Part shown: positions 17,250-55,565 of the stretch, piece after piece
Layout: each line of letters opens with the position of its first letter
Numbering within the stretch: position 1 is the stretch's first letter
Source of the DNA: Ostrea edulis
Taxonomy: Eukaryota
Direction: 5' to 3'
NCBI RefSeq assembly: GCF_947568905.1
Contig: NC_079168.1
Location: 71,362,001-71,426,000 of the forward strand
Length of the DNA: 64,000 nucleotides
Translations under genes and position numbers: made by a program
The notes under the pieces: generated by a model
What the model was told of the DNA's origin: nothing
What the model saw: only the letters and a program-made list of their open reading frames with translations
The model's database searches: none

Positions 17250-17871
17250 TTAATTTGGATGATGGTATTGGTCACTGTACTGACCAATCTCTCCGTGATC
17301 ATCAACCACATCGTCATCCCTGTCTGCACTCTCGCTGTAGGGATCCAAAGCCGATGATGTTTCTTTTAGAGGCTTTTCCTTGAGACTTTGTGGTGTTTCA
17401 TGTCGTGTGTCATAAGGCTGACCTTTCGTAAAATCTGATACAATGTTATTTGCCTGCAAATTCAAAAAGATACATGTACTAGTACTCATCGGTTTCTCAC
17501 CATTAAATTATTGCATAGAAAGCTCTTTTCTATCCAAATCCATTAGCGAAATAAGTGATACTATGCACATGCAACACATGCTGACTGTTCACGTACCCAA
17601 ATATAAAAAGTACCGCATCCGGCGCTGGTTGCGTGCGCCATATCCTCGTTATACGGTTTCAAAATATGTGCCGCCATGTTGATAGAGTTTTCCTCGATGT
17701 TTACCTTATCAAATTTCCTAACCAGGGTTATCAGAGCCTTTTTCCCAGATCTCCACATCAAATACTGAATATCCATCCAATCCTTCAATACACACAATAA
17801 ATTCTAAACTTACCTGTAGATACCACATTCAGAAAAAAGATATGTACACTGTTTTTTATTTTATATATATA

Positions 17872-17916
<45 letters not shown>

Positions 17917-18072
17917 AAATTGTGTTTTTAAAAAAAAATCACAGTGTCCGGTATAAAATATTAAAAGAAATAGAATAAACAGTACACAAAGTTAAAAATT
18001 TAACGCCTGAGGATTATAAAATGAAAGCGCTTGCGTTAAATTTTTAACTTTGTGTACTGTTTATTCTATTTC

Positions 18073-18126
<54 letters not shown>

Positions 18127-18386
18127 TAATGAAAATCAGAATGACACATTCCATAAAAGCAATAATTTACTGCAGCGCTTTCGTCATATCTACATGATTC
18201 ATCAGGCAGTTCAAATATACAAAAATTGTTTAGTAACGTCTTTGTTGTGACGTCAATTAAACGAGTCCTTTATGACATAAAAAACGTTAACCGGTAGCGT
18301 TTGGTAATTGTCTACAATTCCGACATATTTTGTAAATAGATGCGAAATTGTTACAGTAGTCCATTTATTCAAATAATAATTTTTAC

Positions 18387-18462
<76 letters not shown>

Positions 18463-21400
18463 CCTCCAACATTTCCTGCCTCTCTCCTAATAACGTGAAG
18501 GTGGCTTTCATTACGTCGTGTACGATTGGTTTCGGTGATTTGTAGTTACGTAGCTCCGAGATGGTGACTTGATTCATTTCCAGAATTCCGTGTGCGTACT
18601 TCTTCGTCTTTCTTAGATCTGCCAACACATCTTCTGCTTTTTGGATGAGCGATTGCAGCTTGTTTTGGAATTTAGAAGACTTTGCATCATAGATACTGTT
18701 CTCCAATGCAGAGAGGTTCCTTCTGTTGACACTGTCTCTTAGTTCTACCACATCAAATTACCACTTACATAATGCAACGAAAAATACATTAAGCTGCCTA
18801 GCTCTACCTTTATTTTCCGTGCAAATCTTACAGTAAGAGGAAATGTTTATGCGCCCTAATATATGTCTTAGTATGCCTTCGCCATGAAATACGGATATTT
18901 ACTCGTACATGCAGTCAATAAGACGTTTTGTGAAACGCTATGTAGCCTAGTCTTATCATCATGAACATGTTTGTGTTTTTGTGTCCTAACATAACAATTG
19001 ACCTTGTCTATATATGTTTCATAAAATTCATGACCTTGACCAAAGCCGGGATAATTACTACACCCTAATGAAAACGTGTTTAGTTCGTTTCAAACTTTAA
19101 ATATTTCACAAGGTGTGATAAACACTAATACTGTTATAGATATCCCAGTGCACGCAATGACTAAACTGCTTTGATCTTGCTAACTTTAATGCACGGGAGT
19201 ATATTTAAAAGCCTAAAATAAAATTAAAATACATAATGTATTTTGTAAGGGACGATAAATACCGTTCATGAATACAATCTTTATATGGTGCATGTACAAT
19301 TCACGACTGTTCAAGGCGATCGGCAGATCCCCCATTGGTTGTGGTAATGATAAATTGAAATACAATGTACACTTGTTGAAACGAAAATAATTACTTTCAT
19401 CACGCAGGTACAAATATGCCACATTATGACCCTTCGGATCAAACTAACTGTAAATCGTGAAATTATGACCCGGCAGACTAAACTGAAACTGTAAATCGTG
19501 ATCCCGTTGAATAAACTGAAAGTAGCAATTAAATCGCGGAATTACGATCCCGTGGTCAAACTTATGCCTGCAGTATATGCATTGCCAATCAACGAATACT
19601 TGTAAAGAAATAAATTTTAAAAACCAGCAAAACGGAAGTAAGTAGGCAATCATTATCTCTCTCTCCATATTCTCAGTTTATTACTCAACAAACCTTTCGA
19701 TAGCTGAAAGTATTGAATTTTATCTTGAGCTCTTTTTATCTCCCCTTTGTCGTCCAAGTCAAACTGTGCAAACTTATTTATGGCTCGCTGAATAACAACC
19801 GGATCTTTTGATTGTAGAGAACCCTGTAGTTGAACCCTGGCTCTCTTCTCTAAAGCTGTCTGTCAAAAAATCATCAATAGTTTTATCTACATATATAATT
19901 GTGTGCATTTAAGTTGGTGGTAAGAAAACAATACCACAAAATGCGGTTAAGACATAATTACCCAAAATATGAATATAAAAAGAAGTAAAATGTTAATATG
20001 GTTCGATTGAGAAAAAATACCTCGTAACTTCGTTGTTTTCTTCCTCCTTCTTTCGCTTCTAGTAAATAATTACAGACATTTTGAAATTCCTTGTCTTCCT
20101 TTCCCTTTGTCTTTATCTGTAGACCATACTCCCCTTTTTGTGAAATTGCTAGTATGATACAAAGCTGATTTCCAACTATCCGCTGTGAAACAAAACTCCT
20201 TAGCTGCTGACTATCCATGGCATGGTGAACTAGTCTACTTTGTACTTGCATCGTTTTCGTCATTGTAAATTTTATTTCCGTTTCTCTTTTACTGTGGAAA
20301 CCAATAACACTGTCGAGATGTGTTTCAGGCTTCAATCCGGCGAGATCAGTTATAAGATTTGGACCAAAACCGACATCCGGATTGCACGGGAAAGGTTTGA
20401 TGTCGTGCCTCGCGTTTTTGCATACAAGCTTGAATGAACACACCCAAGACATATCGTCCCCTTTCAAAATTCCATGAATGTCAATTTTATAAATCCCTGG
20501 ACATGGAAACCGAACACTGAACAACACTTTACCATTCTGGTGTAGCACAGCGACATACTTATCCAACTGGCTTTCGGAGGAAATCGGTGCATCTGACTCC
20601 TCGTCATTATAGAAGAGTTCATATGTTAACATGATGTCATCAATGATGGAGCTTTTCATGGAAATATTACACATTCCGTCCTCAGAATTCAGAACACATT
20701 TTGGTGTACTCAAAATTTTCATTTTATATTCAAAAAAGGAAGGTCTGCAGTAGGGCATCTCTAGAAACTCCTCCTTTGAAATAGGGTTTCTCATAAGCTG
20801 CCACTCGGAGTTGTCAGGGAAACACCGGTAAACGAACTCCTCCGGGTCAGGTAGAAAGTAATAGTCATTAAGTATACTCACGCTCTCTCCAGTGGAGGCT
20901 GGCATCTTCTCACGAACACCCTCACCTTCATATATAGACAGGTCCATTATGTAGGTACATACAAGATTTAACACTCTATGCTTGAAAAATATCAACAGCT
21001 TAAAGCTTACCAAAGAAAATGTACATAAGAATCATAACAAGAGGCCCATGGGCAGCATCGCTCATCTGAGTCACCTTGGCCCATATTTCCCTACATATAT
21101 GCTAGGAGTGAAAGATACATCGCGATGCAGCCGAATCGCGATGTAGTGGTCTCGATTCGATGTTTGATTTATTTCGGGTCTGTTTCGGTTCGATACGGTT
21201 CTAAAACTATAGCACACAGGGTTTTTAATAACACGGCTTCTGATTGGCCAATGGACTTGAAGATTGCCCAATCAACGTACAAGTAGACTTTATTGTATCA
21301 AAATGGACATAGTGGCGTTGAAAAATGCACCTCCAATGTATAAATCGTGGGTATGTCGACACTTCGGATTTAGAACAAGTGATAAAACTGTGGCAACGTG

Positions 21401-23955
21401 TCAAATATGTTTGAAAGATGTAGCCGTGAAAACGAGACGTACTACGAATCTCACATCAGATTTGCAAAGGAAGCATGACATTCATGGATCAAAACTTACT
21501 AAAGTTACTTTTCCAACGTGACGGTAACAAGCGGAACTGACGATGAGCGTCGAGAATCCCAAAAAAGCTGGTACGAGTAAAGATGCTAATTCTCAGAAAA
21601 CGCAGAGATCGGCAAGTAGACAATTGCGTCTTACAGGTGTTTTCAGAGGAAACTTCGGGAAAGATCACCCCCGGGCACAGGCGATTACCAAGGTCATCGG
21701 ATATTTCATTGCCAGTGACATGCGGCCGTATTCTGTGGTTCAAAAGGAAAGTTTCAAACATTTAGTAAGTACTCTTTGAAGAATTTGGTACATGCTAATG
21801 CATCTAATTGAAAATCATCGAATCCAGACTAAAGTATCGAAAATCGAATCGAGAAGGTACTGTATCGTTTCACCCCTAATATATGTATGTAAAACTTTGA
21901 TCCCTATTGTGACCCCAACTTACTCCCGGGGGACATGATTTTTTGCAAACTTGAATCTGCACTATGTCAGGAAGCTTTAATGTAAATATAAACTTTTATG
22001 GTCCAGTGGTTCTGAGAAGAAGTTTTTGATGATTTTCCTTAAATATTTGTATGCAAACATTTGATCCCCTATTTGTGGCCCCATTCTACTCCCAGGGGCC
22101 ATGATTTTACAAACTTGAATCTGCACAATGTCAAGAAGCTTTCATGTAAATCTACTTTCCTGGCCCAGTGGTTCTTGAGAACAAGATTTTTAAAGATTTC
22201 CCTATTTATTTGTATGTAAAACTTTGATCCCCTATTATGGCCCCATCCCCCCCCAGGGGCATGATTTAACAAACTAGAATCTCCACTATGTCAGGAAGTT
22301 TTCATGTAAATTTCAGCTCTTTGGGTCTAATGGTTCTTGCGAAGAAACATTTTTAATGACCCTCACCCTATTTTTGTGATTATCTCCCCTTTGAAAGAGA
22401 CATGGCTCTTCATTTGAAAACACTTGAAAACCCTAAACCCAAGAATGCTTTTTGCAAAGTTTGGTTGAAATTGGTCCAGTGGTTCTAGAGGAGAAGTCGA
22501 AAATGTAGAAAGTTTACAGACAAACAGACATACGAAGGACAGCAGGCTATCAGAAAAGCTCAGTTGAGCTTTCAGCTCAGATGAGCTAATAAAGTCGACA
22601 CAATGTTTAATTAAGATAGATGACCTTTTGCCTCCACAAGAGTCCATTTTCCTGAGTTGTGTCCCACCACTACACGGCATGCCCATAGCGGAAATACAAA
22701 ACGCCAGCCGCCATTGATGTAAACAGCATTCCACATGTTGCGGAGGTTTCCTAGTTCTTTTTGACCGACATCATACCCTGCGCTCTTGGCGAAACCCTGA
22801 ATAATTGTGCAAGGGATCTTTGCCGCTCTGAAATTGGAATTAAGCAACATTGATATTCAAACTCAATTAACGATACACTAGGTATAAACCAGTGCAGTGA
22901 AGGAACCATGGGGTGGAAGAATATGGATACAAAGCGCACGAAAATCTAGAATAACACGATAACGATACAACAATCGAGGTTCTTACCGACAAAGCAGGGT
23001 AAAGAGTGTGGTGTATGAGGATTTTCCCTGTTGCATGCGTCTAAGAATTTCCATCGGTGAATTCAGTATAACATCTGTTGGAAATTTCATATCTCGGACA
23101 TTTTGTCCGACGACCCAGGAGAAAATTGCACGGACCTGCTGGACGTCACGTGTCATTCCTTTAGTAAGTAATTCGGCCAGATCTTCGAATGTGGTGGCAT
23201 CTTCCAAATTAACCTTTTTTGCTCTTTTGTCACCCTCTGCAATGTCAGCAGTTCTTAAAATGTCCGACTTTCTGTTGACTGCCGGTTTAGGTGGAGGGTA
23301 TCCATCTTCAGTTTCAGAAATGTTAATCTGATATAGACATACATAATTCTAATACTACATGTACTATAAACTTGACAATGTACTGTACACGGGAAATTTT
23401 CAGCCCGCATTATTTTCGCGCAAATTCATAGCTCAATATTGAATTAAAACGTCGGTTGTTTACTGTTTGCTTCTTTCTATCTAGATTTGAATTTATAATC
23501 GCCAATTCCTGATATATTTGAAATGAGGGAAAGTAAAACGGGGTTGAAATTTACCGCATATACCAAAATAATATTGAGTACTCTGGATTAACAACCTGTT
23601 GATATATTTGTTCTGCGGACGTCTGTAGATGTATTGTAATGATAGTAGTAAGTCTATAACTGTATCTGTGCGAACTGTAGGCATATTATGATTATTTCCT
23701 ATATTCTATAATTTTTAGAAGGATTTACGGGAGTTGCACCGCCTTTGGTTGAATATTTAGTTTTACAAATATGGTAATTTTTGCCACTTTGTGGTATTTA
23801 ACTCCCTTTGGGGACGTAAGAGGTACAAACTTGGGCTACAACCCCTCCCCCTGAAATTTTATAGTTTTTTATGCTAATGTTGTGATAACTACATGTATGA
23901 CTGTTAAAACTCTAATTCTGCTTACCTTCATTTGATCTATGAATTCAAATGTCAT
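17250..23955 (-). CDS. KY/hillarin-like protein, paralog 2 (~771 aa); first coding exon tentative
   Basis: Exons 23955-23926 (MTFEFIDQMK, tentative), 23327-22987, 22827-22625, 20925-20021, 19859-19694, 18744-18464, 17782-17597 and 17453-17250 (stop). All are GT-AG and in phase, totalling 2316 nt. Motifs GYPPPKP, VRAIFSWV, WNAVYINGGW, LNDYYFLPDPEEFVY. Confidence 0.88.
18000..18039 (+). ncRNA. Hammerhead-like motif forming the loop of a 49-bp hairpin
   Basis: TTAACGC-CTGAGGA-ttataaaat-GAAA-GCGCT-T-GCGTTAA; stem II is weak. Confidence 0.55.
18169..18210 (-). ncRNA. Degenerate hammerhead (cleavage nucleotide missing)
   Basis: Minus strand reads ACTGC-CTGATGA-ATCATG-taga-TATGAC-GAAA-GCGCT-GCAGT. 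Confidence 0.55.
18387..18456. repeat. Compound (CT)n(TA)n microsatellite just inside a paralog 2 intron; other (TA)n tracts at 17861-17893, 18078-18124, 33948-33988, 34502-34536, 35601-35625, 38095-38112 and 49367-49384
   Basis: Read directly. Confidence 0.95.
21036..22593. mobile_element. Helentron-associated non-autonomous element (HINE-like) with ~166-bp internal tandem repeats, in a paralog 2 intron
   Basis: Ends aacaagaggcccatggg...ctca.ctgag and cagaaaagctca.ttgagctttcagctcag.tgagctaa. (CAGA)-like tract near 22517. About 3 repeat units at 21887-22340. Confidence 0.72.
21103..21878 (+). mobile_element. Internally deleted hAT transposon with BED zinc-finger remnant
   Basis: Imperfect TIRs taggagtgaaagatac / gtatcgtttcacccctA; 8-bp TSD atatatgc / atatatgt. 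The ORFs contain WVCRHF..CQIC..TTNLTSDLQRKH and IGYFIASDMRPYSVV. Confidence 0.85.
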
Positions 23956-26119: not shown

Positions 26120-29006
26120 NNNNNNNNNNNNNNNNNNNNNNNNNNNNNNNNNNNNNNNNNNNNNNNNNNNNNNNNNNNNNNNNNNNNNNNNNNNNNNNNN
26201 NNNNNNNNNNNNNNNNNNNNNNNNNNNNNNNNNNNNNNNNNNNNNNNNNNNNNNNNNNNNNNNNNNNNNNNNNNNNNNNNNNNNNNNNNNNNNNNNNNNN
26301 NNNNNNNNNNNNNNNNNNNAAGGGTCTAAGTAAATCTTGTGTTTCATTCCATAGACCAAAAACCATTGGAAGATACACTGTACATATCATAGGAGACGTG
26401 GACCATGTCAATTATCGCAAGAATTATTCAGTCTTTAATTATACCGTATTTAGTTAGTACATTTTTATAAATAGAACGCCGGGGTTTAAATCCTTTGAGA
26501 TATTACACGGGTTCGAAGCTGGAAAGTTGTTACTAATATAATGGTGAAATAGACAGACGTTTATTGGTAGATTCAATCTGATTTTCCGACAACAAAGAAT
26601 AAAATTGAATCAAAGAGAAGTCGATGTATATCAAAAACCAGGCCTTTGTCATAAGGCAAAATACACGGTATTCATAAATGATACATTGTTATGCAGATCT
26701 GGTATGAACACCATCCAAATGAAAGCGTGTTGTCCAATCAATAAGTGGATTTCTCTAATATACACATTGATTTATTCTTCGTTTCGAAAGGTTTCACTCT
26801 TTGGTTACTTTTATAATATTTGAATTTATTTACTGTTTTCATTTGTGGAATACGAATGTCTGTTTCAATTTGTGTAACACATGTACACGTAAATCAATGT
26901 ACTGAAGTATATTACACGCGATATGAAAATCTAATGATATAGTCATAAAGAAATTGCTGGAATTGAAAATTTGAAATAGATTGAGAAATTCAGTTTTTTA
27001 TTAGTGTAATTTTCCCCAAATAAAATTCAAAATAAATGACGCTCACTCTTCCCGCAATGAATGATTATAAAATTAATCGATTCTACATAGCTGTAAAAAT
27101 CGCAGACAAAAGCATCAATGTCAGAACAACTCAATTTTTTAAAAAACAAAATGTAAAACTTACCTCGTAAATTGAAGTGTCGCTGATTTAATCAAGTCAG
27201 CATGCGAGTTACACTTACAACGTTACTAAGCAGCAAATGGGGCGAGCAACATCACACGTCTAGAGTTTGTTGTATTTTAACTAAACGATTAATATTGACT
27301 GTACATCGATTTCTGCCACTGTACTCTGTACAGTTTCTTTGGAGTATTTAGAAATAGTTTTAAAGTGACTTGAAAATAACGATTTTTACCAGTCGAATAA
27401 TAATGTCAGACTTAACGACTAACTTAAATGGGGGAAAAAAAAAAAAAAAAAAAAAAAACTTAAATGGGGGATTTCAAAAAATTATTTTATGAAACAGGGT
27501 CTACGTTCATGCATTTAGAAACTCACTAGTTTATCTCTCAATGACATAGGAATATATACTAATGACTAACAAAAACATATATTTTGTACAAAATCAAAAG
27601 AAACCTAATAAAACTACGTTAGGTAACCGCTTTTAGTGTATAGAAATATAAAAGGAAGAATTGTTGTCTTGCAAGATAATTATTTAATCACCAAAATCAC
27701 AAATTCATGTGCCTATTTTGAGGTTGAAAAGTGATTGGCATCATTCAATACTGTTGTTATTACTCAAATATATACATGTACTATAGAGTAATTTCGATTG
27801 AATTAAATGTTTTGTGACAAAATGACAGTTAATGCCCTTTACGAAGCTGATTCCGAGCGGGTTATTGATGAATGGAAGTAAACAACTTCATTTCGTGTAG
27901 AATGATTTATTTTCGACAATTTCATAACTCTGTACATTAACTGCAATGTGCGAGTGCATGTCTTGCGACGTAATAATGATATTGATAATGAATAAATCAT
28001 TGTGTTTTCTACAAAGAAGTTGTTCATGCATGATGTTCACGAGACACATCAAGAACAAATCTTCTGCAAAGCGAGACTTTCCCTTACAGCATGGGGATAT
28101 TACCAAAGTAATATATTGTATAACTTTTTCTTGTTTACGCGTTTTTCCTCTGTGACATTGAATTTCTACATGTATCTTTGAATACACGTAGTATGAAACC
28201 AGATCTTAATGTAAGAAGTACATCAAAATTCGGTATACAAAAGATTAAAGATTTCGGGATTTTCCTACCAGTAATATAAAACCTTGACAAGCAACGTGAC
28301 GTAATATCTATATTCTGGAAATTTGACACTGGCCGAGGCGGTTCCATTCTTCTCGACCTGCTTGCGAGTACATAGAAAGCCATCGTGCGTGCGAATGAAA
28401 TGCAGGACTGCGATATCAGTTTGTTGAAATCACTTCTTTTAAGACTTTAATGAAAAGACCAAATTAATTTACGTCGCCCTGGTCTGCCGTTAACCGGAGG
28501 TTTGTAATTCAGAGCTCATGAGACCCCCAAATTGTTTACATGAATTTGTTTCTGGTCTTGTCAACTGTGTAACAATAAAAGCGCATACTGGTATTGGAAA
28601 TTGCAAAATAGATACAATTGCCACCAAATCCCATACATTACAGGAAATATTTCTTACCAGTTTTTATTTGTATGTTAAAATGGAAGTGTGGGATCTAAAC
28701 TCCAGGTGTTTGTGTGTGTAAACTTACGTTCGTGTTTTAGTGATTGCAACTTGTGCATGACTGACGCATTACAAACGCCATTCGATGCCACTTATTAGAA
28801 ATTTCAAAACCCCGCCCAAACGCCAGTTCTGAAAAGTCGGTAAAAGCTCTTACACGGATAATAGTCCAATTTTGAATATATACATATAAAAATAACTGAG
28901 GCATAATGATAATGACTGTGTCACGTGGGGAGGATGTGAAACATAACACAGGGGAAATATAAATGTGAAAATAAAACATGAATAGACAATCTGGTTAATC
29001 CTCTGT

Positions 29007-32000
29007 TCATTTCTTTGGTTTTAGGTTCACTTCTGGTGTGGCGGGCGGATCAGGCTCCTTTATCACCTTCTGAATCTGAACACAAAAACAAGAAATATTG
29101 TCAACAAAAACCATCAAATGAATCAACCGTGAATATCCAACAACGACTTCTACAGCATATTCTTTCCGTTTTGCGAATTCTATAATGTTAAAATACATTA
29201 AGCAGGACTAACCCAGCAATAGAAGGAGGCCGCGCCAACACTCGTCTTCCGCACTTCGTTCTCTGTGATTTTCAAGAACATGTTTTTTACTTTGATTTGT
29301 ACCTTTTCAGGCACCTCAGCAAGATTAAACTTTTGGAATCTCTGAAGTAGACTTTTTTTGCCCGTTTTCCTCATCAAGCTTTGAATATACTCCCAAAACT
29401 GCAATCAAAGATGGGTTATTAATCAATGTCATAATGAATTTTTTGAAAATGCTATTCTCAAATTCGTCGGTTAAGATTTACCTGAAGATTTTCCTCTATT
29501 TCCCCTAACATAAGAAAAGTCGCAATCATGACATCGTGGACGACAACTGGTGGACTTTTATAGTTCATCAGTTCCGCTATAATAGGTTTGTTGAGATCAG
29601 GGATCGGATGCTGGAATCCGCGTAGATTACGCAACTCAGCCAGAACTTCCTCTGCTTGTTTGATCAGTGCCGTCAAGCGGTCCATATATTCCGAGCTACG
29701 CGCTATCGATATTGCTTGGACGAGACATTTATCATTCCTCCTGTTGATTGCATTCATTAAAGCTGTTTTAAGAGAAATCAGTGTATGGATAAAACATTGA
29801 AAAATATTCACAATACCACCGATATGGGCTTTAATGAGCGAAAATATCAAAATAATAGGCCTAGGTTAATCATTCTTATAAATACACAGTTAAACATTCG
29901 TGAATGCATTATGGGCCATATAATGATAAAGTGGAATTACTGTACACAGGCTGTAGAAAAAATCGGAATAGGGATTATCTTACTTTGCTTGACTTCCAGA
30001 AACTCAAGTTTAGTGCTGGCCTTGGTGTAGTCCCCGCGGTCCTCTAGTCCAGCATTCACAAACTTATCAATCGTCTCCTTCAGGCGGTCAATATCCTTCA
30101 CCGTGGTGGCATCCTTAATACCCTTCCTCAGTATCTTCTCTCTGGCATTCTGCATCATACAAACATATCGCAACAGCTCTCACTTACACATATTGGTTGT
30201 TCTTTCACCAAGCGCAACATTATTACAAGTGAAAGTCGTTAATACATGTACATTGTACGATAGAGGTCCCTCACCACTACGACTTTAAGTGTCAAGCATA
30301 AGTCAGAATTTGTAACACTTTGGGTATAAAGGGGATTTCGTCTTTATAGGAGTGAAAACCCTCAAATAGGACATACAACAATATACATGTACACGTACAC
30401 ACTAAACAATACAATCTAGATGCGATCTGAAGAACGGAGGTCTTGTGTCACAACAATCTAATTAAAATCAGATCCAAGAATACGCTCACAATCGCTACAA
30501 TATACTTACTCAGAGTATACGGAGCGGATCTAAAAAGTCTGTTTTAATTAGATCGTGTGTCACAACAGACGTTGGTAAGATAGAGAACCCCTCAGCACTA
30601 TGACTTTGGAATGCTATTACATGACCCAAAAATAGCCGTTTTGTTAAATATCATTCAGAGTTATTCAAAACTTTAAATTTTAGAGTATGAAGATTTATTT
30701 ATACCTCCCAGCCTTTCCTTTTTCTGGTCGTTGGTCTTGGATCCTCTGTGCAGATAAGATAATTGCAGATGTTGTTCATTTCTCCCGGGACGTCTTTTTG
30801 CTTACCATAGATTTTGATAAGGTAGTCGCCATGTTGAGGAATTTTACCCATAATGTCAGTCCTTCCGACATTTTTTTTGTAGTAAAATCTCCCTGCTAGT
30901 TCGTTCTCACTCAGAAGTATGTGTAAAAACTTGACTTTTACGGAAAGATATGTTTCTGTCATAAACGTCATGTGAATTTCTTGGTGTGGTTTCATCACGA
31001 TAAGTCCTGATTTGTGAGAGGGGTCCATTATTCCCGCTTTCTGAGCTTCATATGAGTATCCAAGTCCGATCCATGGCGCATCAGGAAAAGGAACACAATT
31101 TTCTCGCGGATTTTCACAAACGAGGCGATAATCCGCAATCCATGGAACGTTCTCACGATCGACATGTCCACCAAATATTGACAGTTTGTACACACCAGGA
31201 ACCGGAAATCTAACGATGAATGTCCAAACATCATCTTCAAAGTTCATGAGGACATATTTGTTTAGCGGCGTTTTATTGTCAAGGTCAACATCAGATTCGT
31301 CGCGTTTGAAAAGCAGATCATAGTTCATTTGCGTTGGGTAGTCCTCGGGCACGCGGAATGATATTTCAACTACCCCATCCTTGTCGTATAAGATGCAACT
31401 TTGTTCTGTGAGAAGCTTTAGACCTAATCGAAAATACGCTTCCTGAAAAAAGGGAATGCGAACGAACCGGTCAAGGTCGTATGGTACAGTTAGTAGTTGC
31501 CACTTTGGGTCGTCAGGCATACAAAAATAAAGGAAATCATGTGGATCGGTAAGGAAAAAGAACTCGTTGATTTTCTGTATTGTCCATCCCTCTGTGTTTT
31601 CCTCGTCGTCATCGTAGGCCGTCCACTTGTCCAATCCAGACTTCCCAATCACCGTCTGACACGCCCACAGTGGATGAATCAACCTCCAGCTGTCCTTGAC
31701 CCATACCACGTTCCACTTGGTTCTGAGGTTGGACAGTGTATCTGAGGTTCCCACTTCGTACCCAGCACTTTTGCATACTCCCTTTATTATAGCACATTTT
31801 ATTCCTGATTTTCTACAAAGGATTGTAATGCGAGGTTGAAAAATGGAGTTAAAACGTCTAATTCGTGTAGGAATTTGGAAAAAGTCCTTGAATACCAAAA
31901 CCTTTAATTGCACCTGTAATTGTAGGATATTTCAAATCATGTTCTTACCTGCAGAGTACGGCGAAAAGCGAGGCGTACGATGCACGTCCCTCCTTGATGA

Positions 32001-32856
32001 GTTTCATAAACCCTCGAGGTGTCTTGACGAGATCCTCTACAGTATATCCGTCCAAGTTCTTGTATTTGGTGGTAGTGATTGGCTGAACACAGAGCCACAT
32101 GAATAGTGCACGTACCTTCTGCATGTCTGTCCGGAATGGCAGAACGAGGTAGTCGAGAAGCTGCTGGAAGGACAAGTCAATCTTAGAAGGAACCTGTAAT
32201 AAAGGGAAAAAAACATACACTCCACAACTATATGGGTACATACACATAAACATCACTGTACTCTTTTTCAATGAATAAGATGACAGATGCGATTCATGTG
32301 GATGAATATTGTGAATGAAGTTGAAAGGTGTGATTTCAAGCAGAGGATTATAGTCCAGCCATAGAACAGTTTGGCGTTTTCCTGGAACTAAGTGGACACA
32401 TTTTGATTGGCTTGCAAAAGAGGTTGGGATCCATTGTATTAATTTTACCAAATTCGCGGAGCAATGCTGATGACAATATAGGTCTTGACGATGGGGATAA
32501 TTATGTCCCTGATACCTTTCTAACGTGCTGGTGTACATCTTTATACTTCCAGTGTTCATAAATATCATCCTTTTTCAGAGAGTTCTGTTTGGGTACGGGG
32601 TAATCCTCGTCTGACGGAAATTCGGGTACGTCTACCTATAATTCAAATTTAGTATATACGAACATTACATTAATTCAAAACTGTATATTTTCACAAGACG
32701 TCGGGTCAGTTCCTTTTTTTATTTTAATTTCAGTGCACGTGATCATTTCAAACAAGGTAATATAATACTTGCCTCTTCATCGTCAGGTTCCCGCTGATCA
32801 CCGGACTTCTGAGATTTGGATTGCCGAGATCCTTGTGCCGAGGAATTGCTACCCAT
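29007..32856 (-). CDS. KY/hillarin-like protein, paralog 3 (~752 aa)
   Basis: Exons 32856-32773 (MGSNSS..., GC donor), 32635-32516, 32193-31949, 31812-30705, 30149-29984, 29762-29482, 29398-29213 and 29075-29007. In phase, 2259 nt. The 166/281/186-nt exons equal those of paralog 2. Confidence 0.9.
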
Positions 32857-33149: not shown

Positions 33150-43347
<10,198 letters not shown>

Positions 43348-53535: not shown

Positions 53536-55565
53536 TGTAAACTGGCATCAAACACGCACCTGTCTGAAAAATAGTTCCTGTAAAAGCCGGTCCAACTGAT
53601 TTTCAAAGACAATGTTAAATAAAGATTCAATATGAGATCTATTAAAATTAATGCAGCGAAAATATATTCTGTGAATGCCTGTAGTAGGCTGATTGATTTA
53701 TCACGTGATCCGAATTAATTAGAAATTCTTTTAATCAATACCATCCTTATTAGTTATCAGTTGGTCTAAATCACGACAGTAAACCATTAACGTTGTNNNN
53801 NNNNNNNNNNNNNNNNNNNNNNNNNNNNNNNNNNNNNNNNNNNNNNNNNNNNNNNNNNNNNNNNNNNNNNNNNNNNNNNNNNNNNNNNNNNNNNNNNNNN
53901 NNNNNNNNNNNNNNNNNNNNNNNNNNNNNNNTTGATTACAGAAATCGTCAAGAAAGGAATGTCATAGGTTAACGTGTGTTTGTCTGATTGTCAGAAATGA
54001 ATATCAGAAGGTTTGTCTGATTGTCAGAAATGAATATCAGGAGAGACAGATTTGGATGTTGTGAACTTCTTAATAGTATATAGCGTATATATTGGAATCA
54101 AAACTACAAGCTCGTATTATTTGCATACTATTCATTGCAAGAAACACGGTGATCTACACAGAGACTGTTTGTGTTGTGACTTAGTGGCAGATACAAAAGA
54201 AGAAACACATTTTTTTAGCAATAAAACTCTTCTGTAAATGAAAACTTCATGGTAGCAAGATTATGTCACCGCTATTTACAAGTAAGATTTTAATATTGAA
54301 CCTGAGCTGGGATAACACACCTGAGTTCTCTGTACGTGTGATTATGATGGAATGTTCTGTTGTAGGTTTCTCTGAGACGTCTCAACGTGCACAGGTGTGC
54401 TAATACCTGGAACAAAAGTACAAAAGATCTTGCACGTTTTGCACAAACATTTCCTTATCATCGATTACCTTTTGCAGTATGCAGAGTTATCGGGAACAAT
54501 AACGCTTGTAAATTTGTAATCGCTACAGAATGCTCTATAAGCTGTATAAACTACATGTATGTAGAAAGAACTATGTATAAAGCTTAACTGGAATTTTTTT
54601 CAATACCGGCGCGCGCGCGCGCGTACACACACACACACACACACGTGTATATATTTAGCGTATATATGATAAAACAATAAATCAAAACATACAACACACG
54701 CAGCCCTGTATTACGGAGTTGGTGAAGGACTGATCTCGATGAACATGCAGTAAGCTATGCAATAAACATTAAAATTACCTTTAAAGCGTATAAGAAACAT
54801 CCACAGGTCCAACGGCCGTTCTGTATCCAATGAAAATAACCTTGTTCTGTCTAATGAAGGTAACCTTCACAGTAGGTTCAGTCTTCCAATTTTGGGTAAG
54901 TAATGAAGAAAATAGTTTCCTCCTTTTGAGGACCAGGTCTCGCCTTTATTTCTGCTTACTTACGCAGACTACACAAGTATTGATTGAAGCAGACGACTCT
55001 AATCGTGTTTGATGAACAGGCCAGTCACCGTATTTTTCTTGTTAAATCCTCGATCACGTTGAATTACCATCATGCATGCATAATTCTGCACTATTTACAT
55101 GCAGGAGTGAATGGAAAAGTGCTTTTAAAGATATAAACAACATTGGACTTTGCCATCTCTGACTTCCAATGGAGTCAGATCACTAAAAAGATAATATTGT
55201 AAAACCTAAATCTACCTATTCATACTCGTCGCTTCAGTTTAAGCCTCTCCAATTTCCTCCTCATTCAATTTAAATTGAAATACTGCTATTCTTGTAATGG
55301 GAGTAATTTGCCTTTTGTGATGTTCACTTAGAGTTTTACAAACCGTTGGTCTCATGAATGTTAATTGAAAATCATTTAAAATTTAAACACCCCGACGGAC
55401 GACGAAAGGCATGATTAGCATGAACTACTGCAGAATAAACAAAGTGCATATATAATATGTGAACCTTGTTGGGGCTGGTGGTCCTTATCGATGTTCGTGA
55501 AGTCATTGAGTGTAGGACTGCTGCAACAGAGCAAAGATAATTTTTTACTTGTTCGGCAAAACAAT

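What the first reader, a model, noticed from the sequence alone, without database searches (positions are those of the whole stretch)
29213..29762. Independent paralog keeps the same MTBD-like module
Seen: paralog 3 encodes DLNKPIIAELMNYKSPPVVVHDVMIATFLMLGEIEENLQFWEYIQSLMRKTGKKSLLQRFQKFNLAEVPEKVQIKVKNMFLKITENEVRKTSVGAASFYCWIQKV, in exons of the same size (281 and 186 nt) as paralog 2. The L.K..I.E+.+..SPP.VV..V start and S.GAAS...W end resemble axonemal dynein MTBDs as recalled. The two paralogs diverge elsewhere but conserve these positions, which argues for a selected folded domain.
Basis: partly seen in the sequence, partly recalled or inferred. Interest (0 to 1): 0.7.

Follow-up and report, generated by a model that had tools for sequence, protein, structure and literature searches.

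The report
Motor-less dynein microtubule-binding domain, third paralog
The last exons of this mollusc scaffold-type (KY/hillarin-like) gene encode a real, selectively maintained relative of the small domain that dynein motors use to grip microtubules. It has no motor and no stalk, and the same scan had already found this family in neighbouring genes.

Summary
On the minus strand, exons 29762-29482 (281 nt) and 29398-29213 (186 nt), plus a 69-nt terminal exon at 29075-29007, encode exactly the quoted peptide. Paralog 2 has exons of identical size and phase.

- A profile of 47 family members hits only dynein heavy chains in the PDB, all at their microtubule-binding domain (MTBD). The best E-value is 4.7e-11.
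- Eight copies in this genome keep open frames, the same intron positions and nearly invariant core residues, although synonymous sites are saturated (pS 0.74-0.97, pN 0.18-0.49). That indicates purifying selection; a numerical dN/dS cannot be computed.

The host protein is KY/hillarin-like (transglutaminase-like core plus Ig-like_KY domains). There is no second stalk helix (CC2) and no AAA+ motor.

The family occurs in molluscs, annelids, a brachiopod and amphioxus, and I found no paper on it. It is not specifically "axonemal".

Paralog 3 is the most dynein-like copy at the tubulin-contact positions (K65, K111, R150/K151) and has a core pI of about 9.1-9.3. Microtubule binding is inferred, not shown.

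The scan had already reported this family twice in this genome (s1-301749, s1-281873), so this finding is a confirming replicate.

The parts
29482..29762 (-). Exon A (281 nt) of paralog 3. It encodes a three-helix, CC1-like segment followed by helices H1 and H2 of the MTBD-like domain; it ends in the H2-H3 loop, just before the invariant Trp.
   Evidence: Translation and AG/GT sites; family profile and DSSP of the model; collinear with P0005 residues 565-661.
29213..29398 (-). Exon B (186 nt) of paralog 3. It encodes helices H3 to H6 of the MTBD-like domain and ends exactly after the invariant W162.
   Evidence: A contig of run X1 covers 29213-29362 and stops at the exon edge. All eight genomic copies end this exon at the same Trp followed by GT.
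29007..29075 (-). Terminal exon (69 nt including the stop codon). It encodes the end of H6 and a short Pro/Lys-rich tail. No CC2 follows.
   Evidence: In-frame join with an AG acceptor. The model shows H6 running to residue 167, then a low-confidence tail. Family members end about 10-40 residues after the Trp. This join is not shown by reads.
29984..30149 (-). Helical linker exon (166 nt) between the Ig-like KY region and the module.
   Evidence: A run X1 contig joins 30705 to 30149, skipping 555 nt with GT..AG ends on the minus strand. In-frame model.
30705..31812 (-). Large exon (1108 nt) holding the C-terminal half of the transglutaminase-like core and the Ig-like_KY domains.
   Evidence: PF23265 Ig-like_KY at E 2e-40; splice sites.
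31949..32193 (-). Exon (245 nt) holding the N-terminal half of the transglutaminase-like core. About 65 residues of N-terminus further upstream were not located.
   Evidence: The joined core passes the Pfam PF01841 cut-off (25.8 bits against 23). Collinear with P0005 residues 67-141.
18464..18744 (-). Paralog 2 exon A (281 nt), the counterpart of 29762-29482.
17597..17782 (-). Paralog 2 exon B (186 nt), the counterpart of 29398-29213.
485..2882 (-). Paralog 1: KY-like exons only. Its module exons lie just left of the window, at G000:C5:71359818-71360418.
   Evidence: tblastn; own-genome search.

Best explanation
Paralog 3 is a six-exon (or longer) minus-strand gene for a KY/hillarin-like protein: a transglutaminase-like core, Ig-like_KY domains and a helical linker. 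Its last about 110 folded residues are a true homologue of the dynein heavy-chain microtubule-binding domain (MTBD). This much is shown: the six-helix H1-H6 domain is present, it is under purifying selection, and it belongs to a family of at least 500 sequence clusters in which the module sits mostly at the C-terminus of KY-like proteins. The module has no CC2 helix, so it cannot form an antiparallel stalk, and it has no AAA+ ring. The helix that corresponds to CC1 is instead preceded by two short helices that the model packs into a small bundle. What follows is inferred. The module most likely acts as a passive, nucleotide-independent anchor that docks the KY-like scaffold onto the microtubule lattice in the way dynein docks (H1, H3 and H6 facing tubulin), without registry-shift control. 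Paralog 3 is the best candidate in this cluster. It has Lys or Arg at the positions equivalent to mouse dynein K3299, R3342 and R3382 (K65, K111, K151, plus the family-conserved R150), and its core pI of about 9.1-9.3 is like that of yeast dynein MTBD. My confidence in the homology is about 0.97. The figure given below is for the whole statement, including microtubule anchoring.
Against: Microtubule binding was not tested, and the one complex prediction gave no verdict. The H1 Lys pair of dynein is not conserved in the family: position 65 is Gln in 70% of members. The family's median core charge is 0, and only 20 of 47 members are net positive. Paralog 2 lacks the H1 and H6 basic residues. In dynein, isolated MTBDs need a defined coiled-coil registry for high affinity, and here there is no CC2. 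The AF2 model is not independent of the sequence homology. The exon B to terminal exon join and the linker exon to exon A join are not shown by reads. RNA status of run X1 is only a guess.
Confidence: 0.6

Rival explanations
1. It is a true MTBD homologue that has been re-purposed. In this tandemly expanded, fast-diverging family, some members of which carry CARD domains, the domain would bind a partner other than the microtubule lattice, for example another protein or free tubulin.
For: The surface basic positions vary between copies while the core is invariant. The family's median charge is neutral. The dynein H1 Lys pair is replaced by Gln in 70% of members. Amphioxus members combine the module with CARD or with CLCA/VWA domains. 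Tandem expansion of at least 7 copies resembles other expanded invertebrate gene families.
Against: K/R at positions 111 and 114 (87% each) and at 150 (74%) are conserved on the H3/H6 face that contacts tubulin in dynein. Paralog 3 itself is dynein-like in charge and contact residues. No alternative ligand is suggested by any result.
Confidence: 0.3
2. The exons are decaying or non-functional remnants: a pseudogene, or unexpressed duplicates that evolve neutrally.
For: No run on record as RNA holds the stretch. A numerical dN/dS could not be obtained.
Against: The 155-codon frame is open in all eight copies despite saturated synonymous change. The chance of no stop codon in 155 random codons is about 6e-4 per copy (my calculation). 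pN is far below pS. All splice sites are canonical. A spliced contig exists in a relative. The core residues are invariant.
Confidence: 0.03
3. The similarity is chance or compositional: generic coiled coil or helical repeat that mimics the dynein stalk.
For: The single sequence scores below the Pfam cut-off (19.3 bits against 24). In the single-sequence PDB search the dynein hits had E-values of 0.29-0.5, and the top hits were pentatricopeptide-repeat artefacts.
Confidence: 0.01
4. It is a piece of a real dynein heavy-chain gene, or an assembly chimera.
For: None beyond the similarity itself.
Against: The PF12777 hits in this genome (the true dynein loci) are disjoint from the module loci. 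The upstream exons are KY-like and join in frame. The same architecture is annotated independently in many species. DNA run X2 covers the locus in two long contigs that overlap only inside a high-copy repeat at about 30450-30504, so that run shows no single unbroken contig.
Confidence: 0.01

Closest known systems
Dynein heavy-chain microtubule-binding domain (the MTBD within Pfam PF12777; structures 3ERR, 5AYH, 6RZB, 6KIO, 8I3J)
   Same: It has the same six-helix H1-H6 globular fold and the same signature positions: Glu in H1, x-P-P after H1, L-L-G at the end of H2, Trp at the start of H3, and S-x-G/A-A...W in H6. It is preceded by a CC1-like helix. In paralog 3 there are basic residues at positions equivalent to K3299, R3342 and R3382.
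   Different: There is no CC2, so no antiparallel stalk and no registry switch. There is no AAA+ ring and no linker. The domain sits at the extreme C-terminus of a non-motor protein. The module has a 3-residue longer H2-H3 loop than mouse dynein-1, plus a conserved 3-residue 'x-G-K' insertion after H3 relative to yeast dynein. It lacks the axonemal flap. The H1 Lys pair is not conserved across the family. The intron positions are its own; none of the sampled dynein genes of this genome has an intron before the H3 Trp.
KY (kyphoscoliosis peptidase) / hillarin / LTD-1 family of transglutaminase-like proteins
   Same: The N-terminal two thirds of the protein carry Transglut_core and Ig-like_KY (PF23265) domains. 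Homologues are named hillarin-like, ltd-1-like or kyphoscoliosis peptidase by NCBI and UniProt.
   Different: It carries a C-terminal helical linker plus an MTBD-like module that is not part of the described family and that database names do not mention. I did not test whether vertebrate KY, leech hillarin or nematode LTD-1 have the module.
Earlier reports of this scan (s1-301749 on paralog 2; s1-281873 on four neighbouring genes)
   Same: Same family, same genome, same tandem cluster, same conclusion.
   Different: This report covers paralog 3. It adds the full in-frame six-exon model, the eight-copy codon analysis, the family census and the interface and charge comparison. That comparison singles out paralog 3 as the most dynein-like copy.

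Membership tests
Dynein MTBD (structural domain) | Compact six-helix bundle H1-H6 | tested here: met
   [not shown]
Dynein MTBD (structural domain) | Significant sequence similarity to dynein MTBDs | tested here: met
   The profile of 47 members against the PDB gives 60 or more dynein chains and nothing else, with a best E-value of 4.7e-11.
Pfam PF12777 (MT, dynein stalk) | Score at or above the gathering cut-off (24 bits) | tested here: not met
   19.3 bits, E 6.2e-4, profile positions 77-207 of 344. Only 3 of 55 family members reach E 1e-3 or better.
Dynein stalk | MTBD flanked by CC1 and CC2 that form an antiparallel coiled coil | tested here: not met
   The protein ends 22 residues after W162, in a Pro/Lys-rich tail of lower confidence. 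Family members end about 10-40 residues after the Trp.
Dynein heavy chain | AAA+ ring and linker in the same polypeptide | tested here: not met
   The upstream 500 residues are Transglut_core plus Ig-like_KY. The module loci are disjoint from the genome's PF12777 dynein loci.
Dynein MTBD (function) | Binds the alpha/beta-tubulin intradimer groove of microtubules | not testable with these tools
   Inferred only. Basic residues are partly conserved at H3 and H6.
KY / hillarin-like proteins | Transglutaminase-like core (PF01841) | tested here: met
   25.8 bits against a cut-off of 23, E 1.3e-5, on the joined exons. The state of the catalytic triad was not assessed.
KY / hillarin-like proteins | KY-like immunoglobulin-like domain (PF23265) | tested here: met
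   E 2e-40, two stretches, in the exon at 31812-30705.

The most novel reading that the evidence does not exclude
An ancestral bilaterian KY-like scaffold captured the dynein MTBD without its stalk partner or motor, creating a family of constitutive, registry-independent microtubule anchors. The family is now expanded in tandem in molluscs and amphioxus. Copies such as paralog 3 keep dynein-type tubulin contacts, while others have drifted to new surfaces. This would be the first natural dynein MTBD that works outside a dynein, and a natural test of how much of MTBD affinity depends on the coiled-coil registry.
Probability: 0.5. Interest if true: 0.7.

Novelty: new variant of a known kind. Interest (0 to 1): 0.55.

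Why it matters
The dynein MTBD is treated as a part unique to dynein heavy chains, and its affinity is thought to be set by sliding of the two stalk helices. This family is conserved across several phyla and places the same domain on a non-motor scaffold with only one of the two flanking helices.

If it binds microtubules, three things follow:
- It defines a new class of microtubule-associated proteins in lophotrochozoans and cephalochordates.
- It links KY/hillarin-type proteins to the microtubule cytoskeleton. Hillarin was named for its place at the axon hillock (from my own knowledge of that protein).
- It offers a natural stalk-less MTBD for biophysical comparison with dynein.

For this particular finding the added value is modest. 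It is a third copy of something the scan had already found, though it is the copy that looks most dynein-like at the interface.

Tried and rejected
- Single-sequence searches were inconclusive. Pfam PF12777 scored below its cut-off. In the PDB phmmer search the dynein hits had E-values of 0.29-0.5, behind designer pentatricopeptide-repeat artefacts that sum many weak repeats.
- The word-index homologue search returned only three exon-sized fragments of 118-141 aa, because of its length window.
- Nei-Gojobori dN/dS is undefined for 23 of the 28 paralog pairs, because pS is 0.74-0.97 and therefore saturated. I report pN against pS instead.
A proxy job used Potamilus P0005 residues 594-732 with this genome's alpha- and beta-tubulin exon pieces. 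It gave 'no answer', with score 0.00 and the controls not run. That is neither support nor evidence against binding.
- Runs X6 and X7 cover only parts of the upstream exons and run into intron sequence, so they say nothing about transcription. No run on record as RNA holds the locus.
- Five literature searches found no paper describing a dynein-type MTBD in a non-dynein protein. They combined dynein MTBD with kyphoscoliosis peptidase, hillarin, non-dynein, MTBD-like and intraconoidal microtubules. The only 'MTBD-like' papers concern TTLL11, a different domain.
- I could not assign the module to a dynein class. PDB bit scores do not separate cytoplasmic from axonemal dyneins: yeast cytoplasmic dynein 45.8, DNAH6 43.3, DNAH2 42.5, mouse dynein-1 39.9, DNAH7 17.4. 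I did not build a tree, because this genome's dynein MTBDs are split over exons.

Full report
**What is there.** The window is eukaryotic, intron-rich DNA from an 895-Mb assembly (G000, contig C5:71362001-71426000). Translating the minus strand across the finding gives two exons with canonical AG/GT borders. Exon A is 29762-29482 (281 nt) and exon B is 29398-29213 (186 nt). A 69-nt terminal exon (29075-29007) supplies the last four residues of the quoted peptide, a short Pro/Lys-rich tail and the stop codon. Paralog 2 has exons of exactly 281 nt (18744-18464) and 186 nt (17782-17597) in the same phase.

**The gene around it.** Upstream on the same strand lie three more exons: a 166-nt helical linker exon (30149-29984), a 1108-nt exon (31812-30705) and a 245-nt exon (32193-31949). 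All six exons join in frame to give 684 residues. The large exon carries Ig-like_KY (PF23265, E 2e-40). The joined first two exons pass the Pfam cut-off for the transglutaminase-like core (PF01841, 25.8 bits against 23). The model is collinear with an annotated 737-residue 'kyphoscoliosis peptidase' of the mussel Potamilus (P0005). About 65 N-terminal residues were not located.

One splice is directly supported. A contig of run X1 (a close relative, about 96-97% identical; its RNA status is only a guess) joins 30705 to 30149, skipping 555 nt with GT..AG ends. A second X1 contig ends exactly at the 3' edge of exon B.

Three such genes lie in tandem in the window. These are paralog 1 at 485-2882 (its module exons are just outside the left edge), paralog 2 and paralog 3.

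**Is it really a dynein MTBD?** Alone, the sequence is only suggestive. PF12777 scores 19.3 bits, below its cut-off of 24, and the dynein MTBD chains in the PDB come up at E 0.3-0.5.

An exhaustive HMMER search found 500 representative clusters at E 1e-3 or better, 167 of them at 1e-10 or better. The match lies mostly at the C-terminus of the hit proteins. A profile of 47 of these modules (alignment A1) then hit more than 60 distinct PDB sequences. Every one is a dynein heavy chain, aligned at its microtubule-binding domain. The best are the yeast MTBD constructs at E 4.7e-11, followed by DNAH6, DNAH2 and mouse dynein-1. The same profile also finds this genome's own dynein exons at up to 30.6 bits. 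The Pfam dynein-stalk model finds those dynein loci but none of the module loci. The two groups are therefore related but distinct.

**Selection.** I extracted the two exons from eight copies in this genome: seven in the C5 tandem cluster at 71.326-71.392 Mb and one at C5:7.3 Mb.
- Six copies have exactly 93+62 codons. The other two differ by one or two codons.
- All eight have the intron just before the H3 Trp, and all end exon B at the H6 Trp followed by GT.
- Synonymous differences are saturated in every pair (pS 0.74-0.97), while pN is 0.18-0.49. For the closest pair, pN is 0.18 and pS 0.93. A numerical dN/dS therefore cannot be given, but neutral evolution is excluded.
- The chance of an open 155-codon frame in random sequence is about 6e-4 per copy (my calculation), and core positions such as H58, E70, Y74, A87, L92, G93, W102, S153, G155 and W162 are identical in all eight copies.
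- The X1 relative differs by 5 synonymous and 3 non-synonymous changes at the listed sites. The three replacements all fall in the variable H5. This sample is small.

**Mapping onto H1, H3 and H6.** Across the 47-member alignment the invariant or near-invariant columns are:
- E70 in H1, then Y74 and P77 just after it;
- M85, L92 and G93 in and just after H2;
- W102 at the start of H3, and G113 after it;
- S153 just before H6, and F159 and W162 within it.

These are the same signature positions seen in the yeast dynein alignment and in this genome's own dynein exons.

For the tubulin-facing basic residues I used the structural correspondence to mouse numbering and the HMM alignment to yeast.
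- Mouse K3298 and K3299 on H1 correspond to N64 and K65.
- R3382 on H6 corresponds to K151, with the family-conserved R150 next to it.
- R3342 on H3 corresponds to K111.

K3298, K3299 and R3382 are named as contact residues in PMC4987762 and PMC6629372. R3342 is from my memory of Redwine et al. 2012.

In the family, position 111 is Lys or Arg in 87% of members, position 114 in 87% and position 150 in 74%. Position 65, however, is Gln in 70% and position 151 is rarely basic. Paralog 3 is basic at positions 65, 110, 111, 114, 120, 150 and 151. Its core charge is +4 with pI 9.27 over residues 58-167 (+3 and 9.07 over 58-162), like yeast MTBD at +3 and 8.96. Paralog 2 has Q65, H150 and A151, a charge of -1 and pI 6.5. 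The family median charge is 0. The interface is thus only partly conserved, and paralog 3 is the most dynein-like copy in the cluster.

**Distribution and what is known.** The named members I looked up come from:
- bivalves (Pinctada, Potamilus, Sinanodonta, Argopecten, Pecten, Mizuhopecten, Ylistrum);
- gastropods (Haliotis, Batillaria, Patella, Lottia);
- annelids (Owenia, Ridgeia);
- the brachiopod Lingula;
- amphioxus.

They are labelled hillarin-like, ltd-1-like, kyphoscoliosis peptidase or uncharacterised. Of 55 longer members, 38 carry Ig-like_KY, 25 Transglut_core, 3 CARD and 3 VWA_2 (2 of these also CLCA). Only 3 reach PF12777 at E 1e-3 or better. One ESM Atlas cluster of short mollusc proteins is auto-named after PF12777, so automatic annotation has touched a minority of members. 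Five literature searches found no paper on a dynein-type MTBD outside dynein. The shared architecture in protostomes and a cephalochordate implies that the fusion is old, and that paralogs 2 and 3 inherited it rather than acquiring it independently.

**Mechanism and rivals.** What is shown: homology, fold (by model), selection, host architecture, and the absence of a stalk partner and a motor. What is inferred: the module docks the KY-like scaffold on microtubules passively, in the dynein manner. The main rival is that the domain has been re-purposed for another partner. In its favour are the variable surface, the neutral family charge, and the tandem expansion with CARD-bearing relatives. I put it at about 0.3. 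Chance similarity, pseudogene status and a dynein-gene fragment are each effectively excluded.

**Relation to earlier scan notes.** Two earlier reports on the same genome reached the same reading. They are s1-301749 on paralog 2 in this window and s1-281873 on four neighbouring genes. I re-derived the result independently for paralog 3 and for the family. This finding is a confirming replicate with some added detail, so I score its own interest below that of the family as a whole.

**Constraints observed.** The three N runs (7842-7984, 26120-26319, 53797-53931) were left alone. 

Noticed in passing
window 30450-30504: A roughly 50-bp element in the intron between the large KY exon and the linker exon is extremely high-copy. 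Summed contig depth is about 39,000 in DNA run X2, against about 35 for the flanks, and many contigs end or begin there. It looks like a short interspersed repeat.
   Followed up: no
window 35916-36986 (+): A 356-aa open frame has the look of a Tc1/mariner-type transposase, in a locally GC-rich stretch (GC 0.45 against about 0.35). It lies inside the region of the separate lysA finding.
   Followed up: no
window 34767-35087 (-) and 35110-35430 (+): Two identical 106-aa open frames lie in inverted orientation 22 bp apart. This is the palindrome already noted by the scan as s1-302173.
   Followed up: no
window 21264-21779 (+): Open frames inside an intron of paralog 2 contain a Cys/His pattern reminiscent of a BED-type zinc finger. 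It may be a transposon remnant.
   Followed up: no
window 17830-18460: The 681-nt intron between paralog 2 exons A and B is filled with (TA)n/(TATA)n and (GA)n microsatellites. The same intron in paralog 3 is only 83 nt.
   Followed up: partly
[not shown]
   Followed up: partly
P0004 (Pinctada imbricata KAK3098481.1, 1437 aa): This annotated protein contains three KY-plus-module units in a row, each 42-45% identical to paralog 3. It is most likely three tandem genes fused by gene prediction, which would mean the tandem array also exists in pearl oysters.
   Followed up: partly
G000 C4:92139500-92142661, C4:23389064-23421398, C1:47483284, C1:74947098, C5:43912609, C5:56653520, C4:30608846: Further dispersed matches to the module (E 2.7e-9 to 7e-4) lie outside the C5 tandem cluster and outside the true dynein loci. 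Their host genes were not examined.
   Followed up: no
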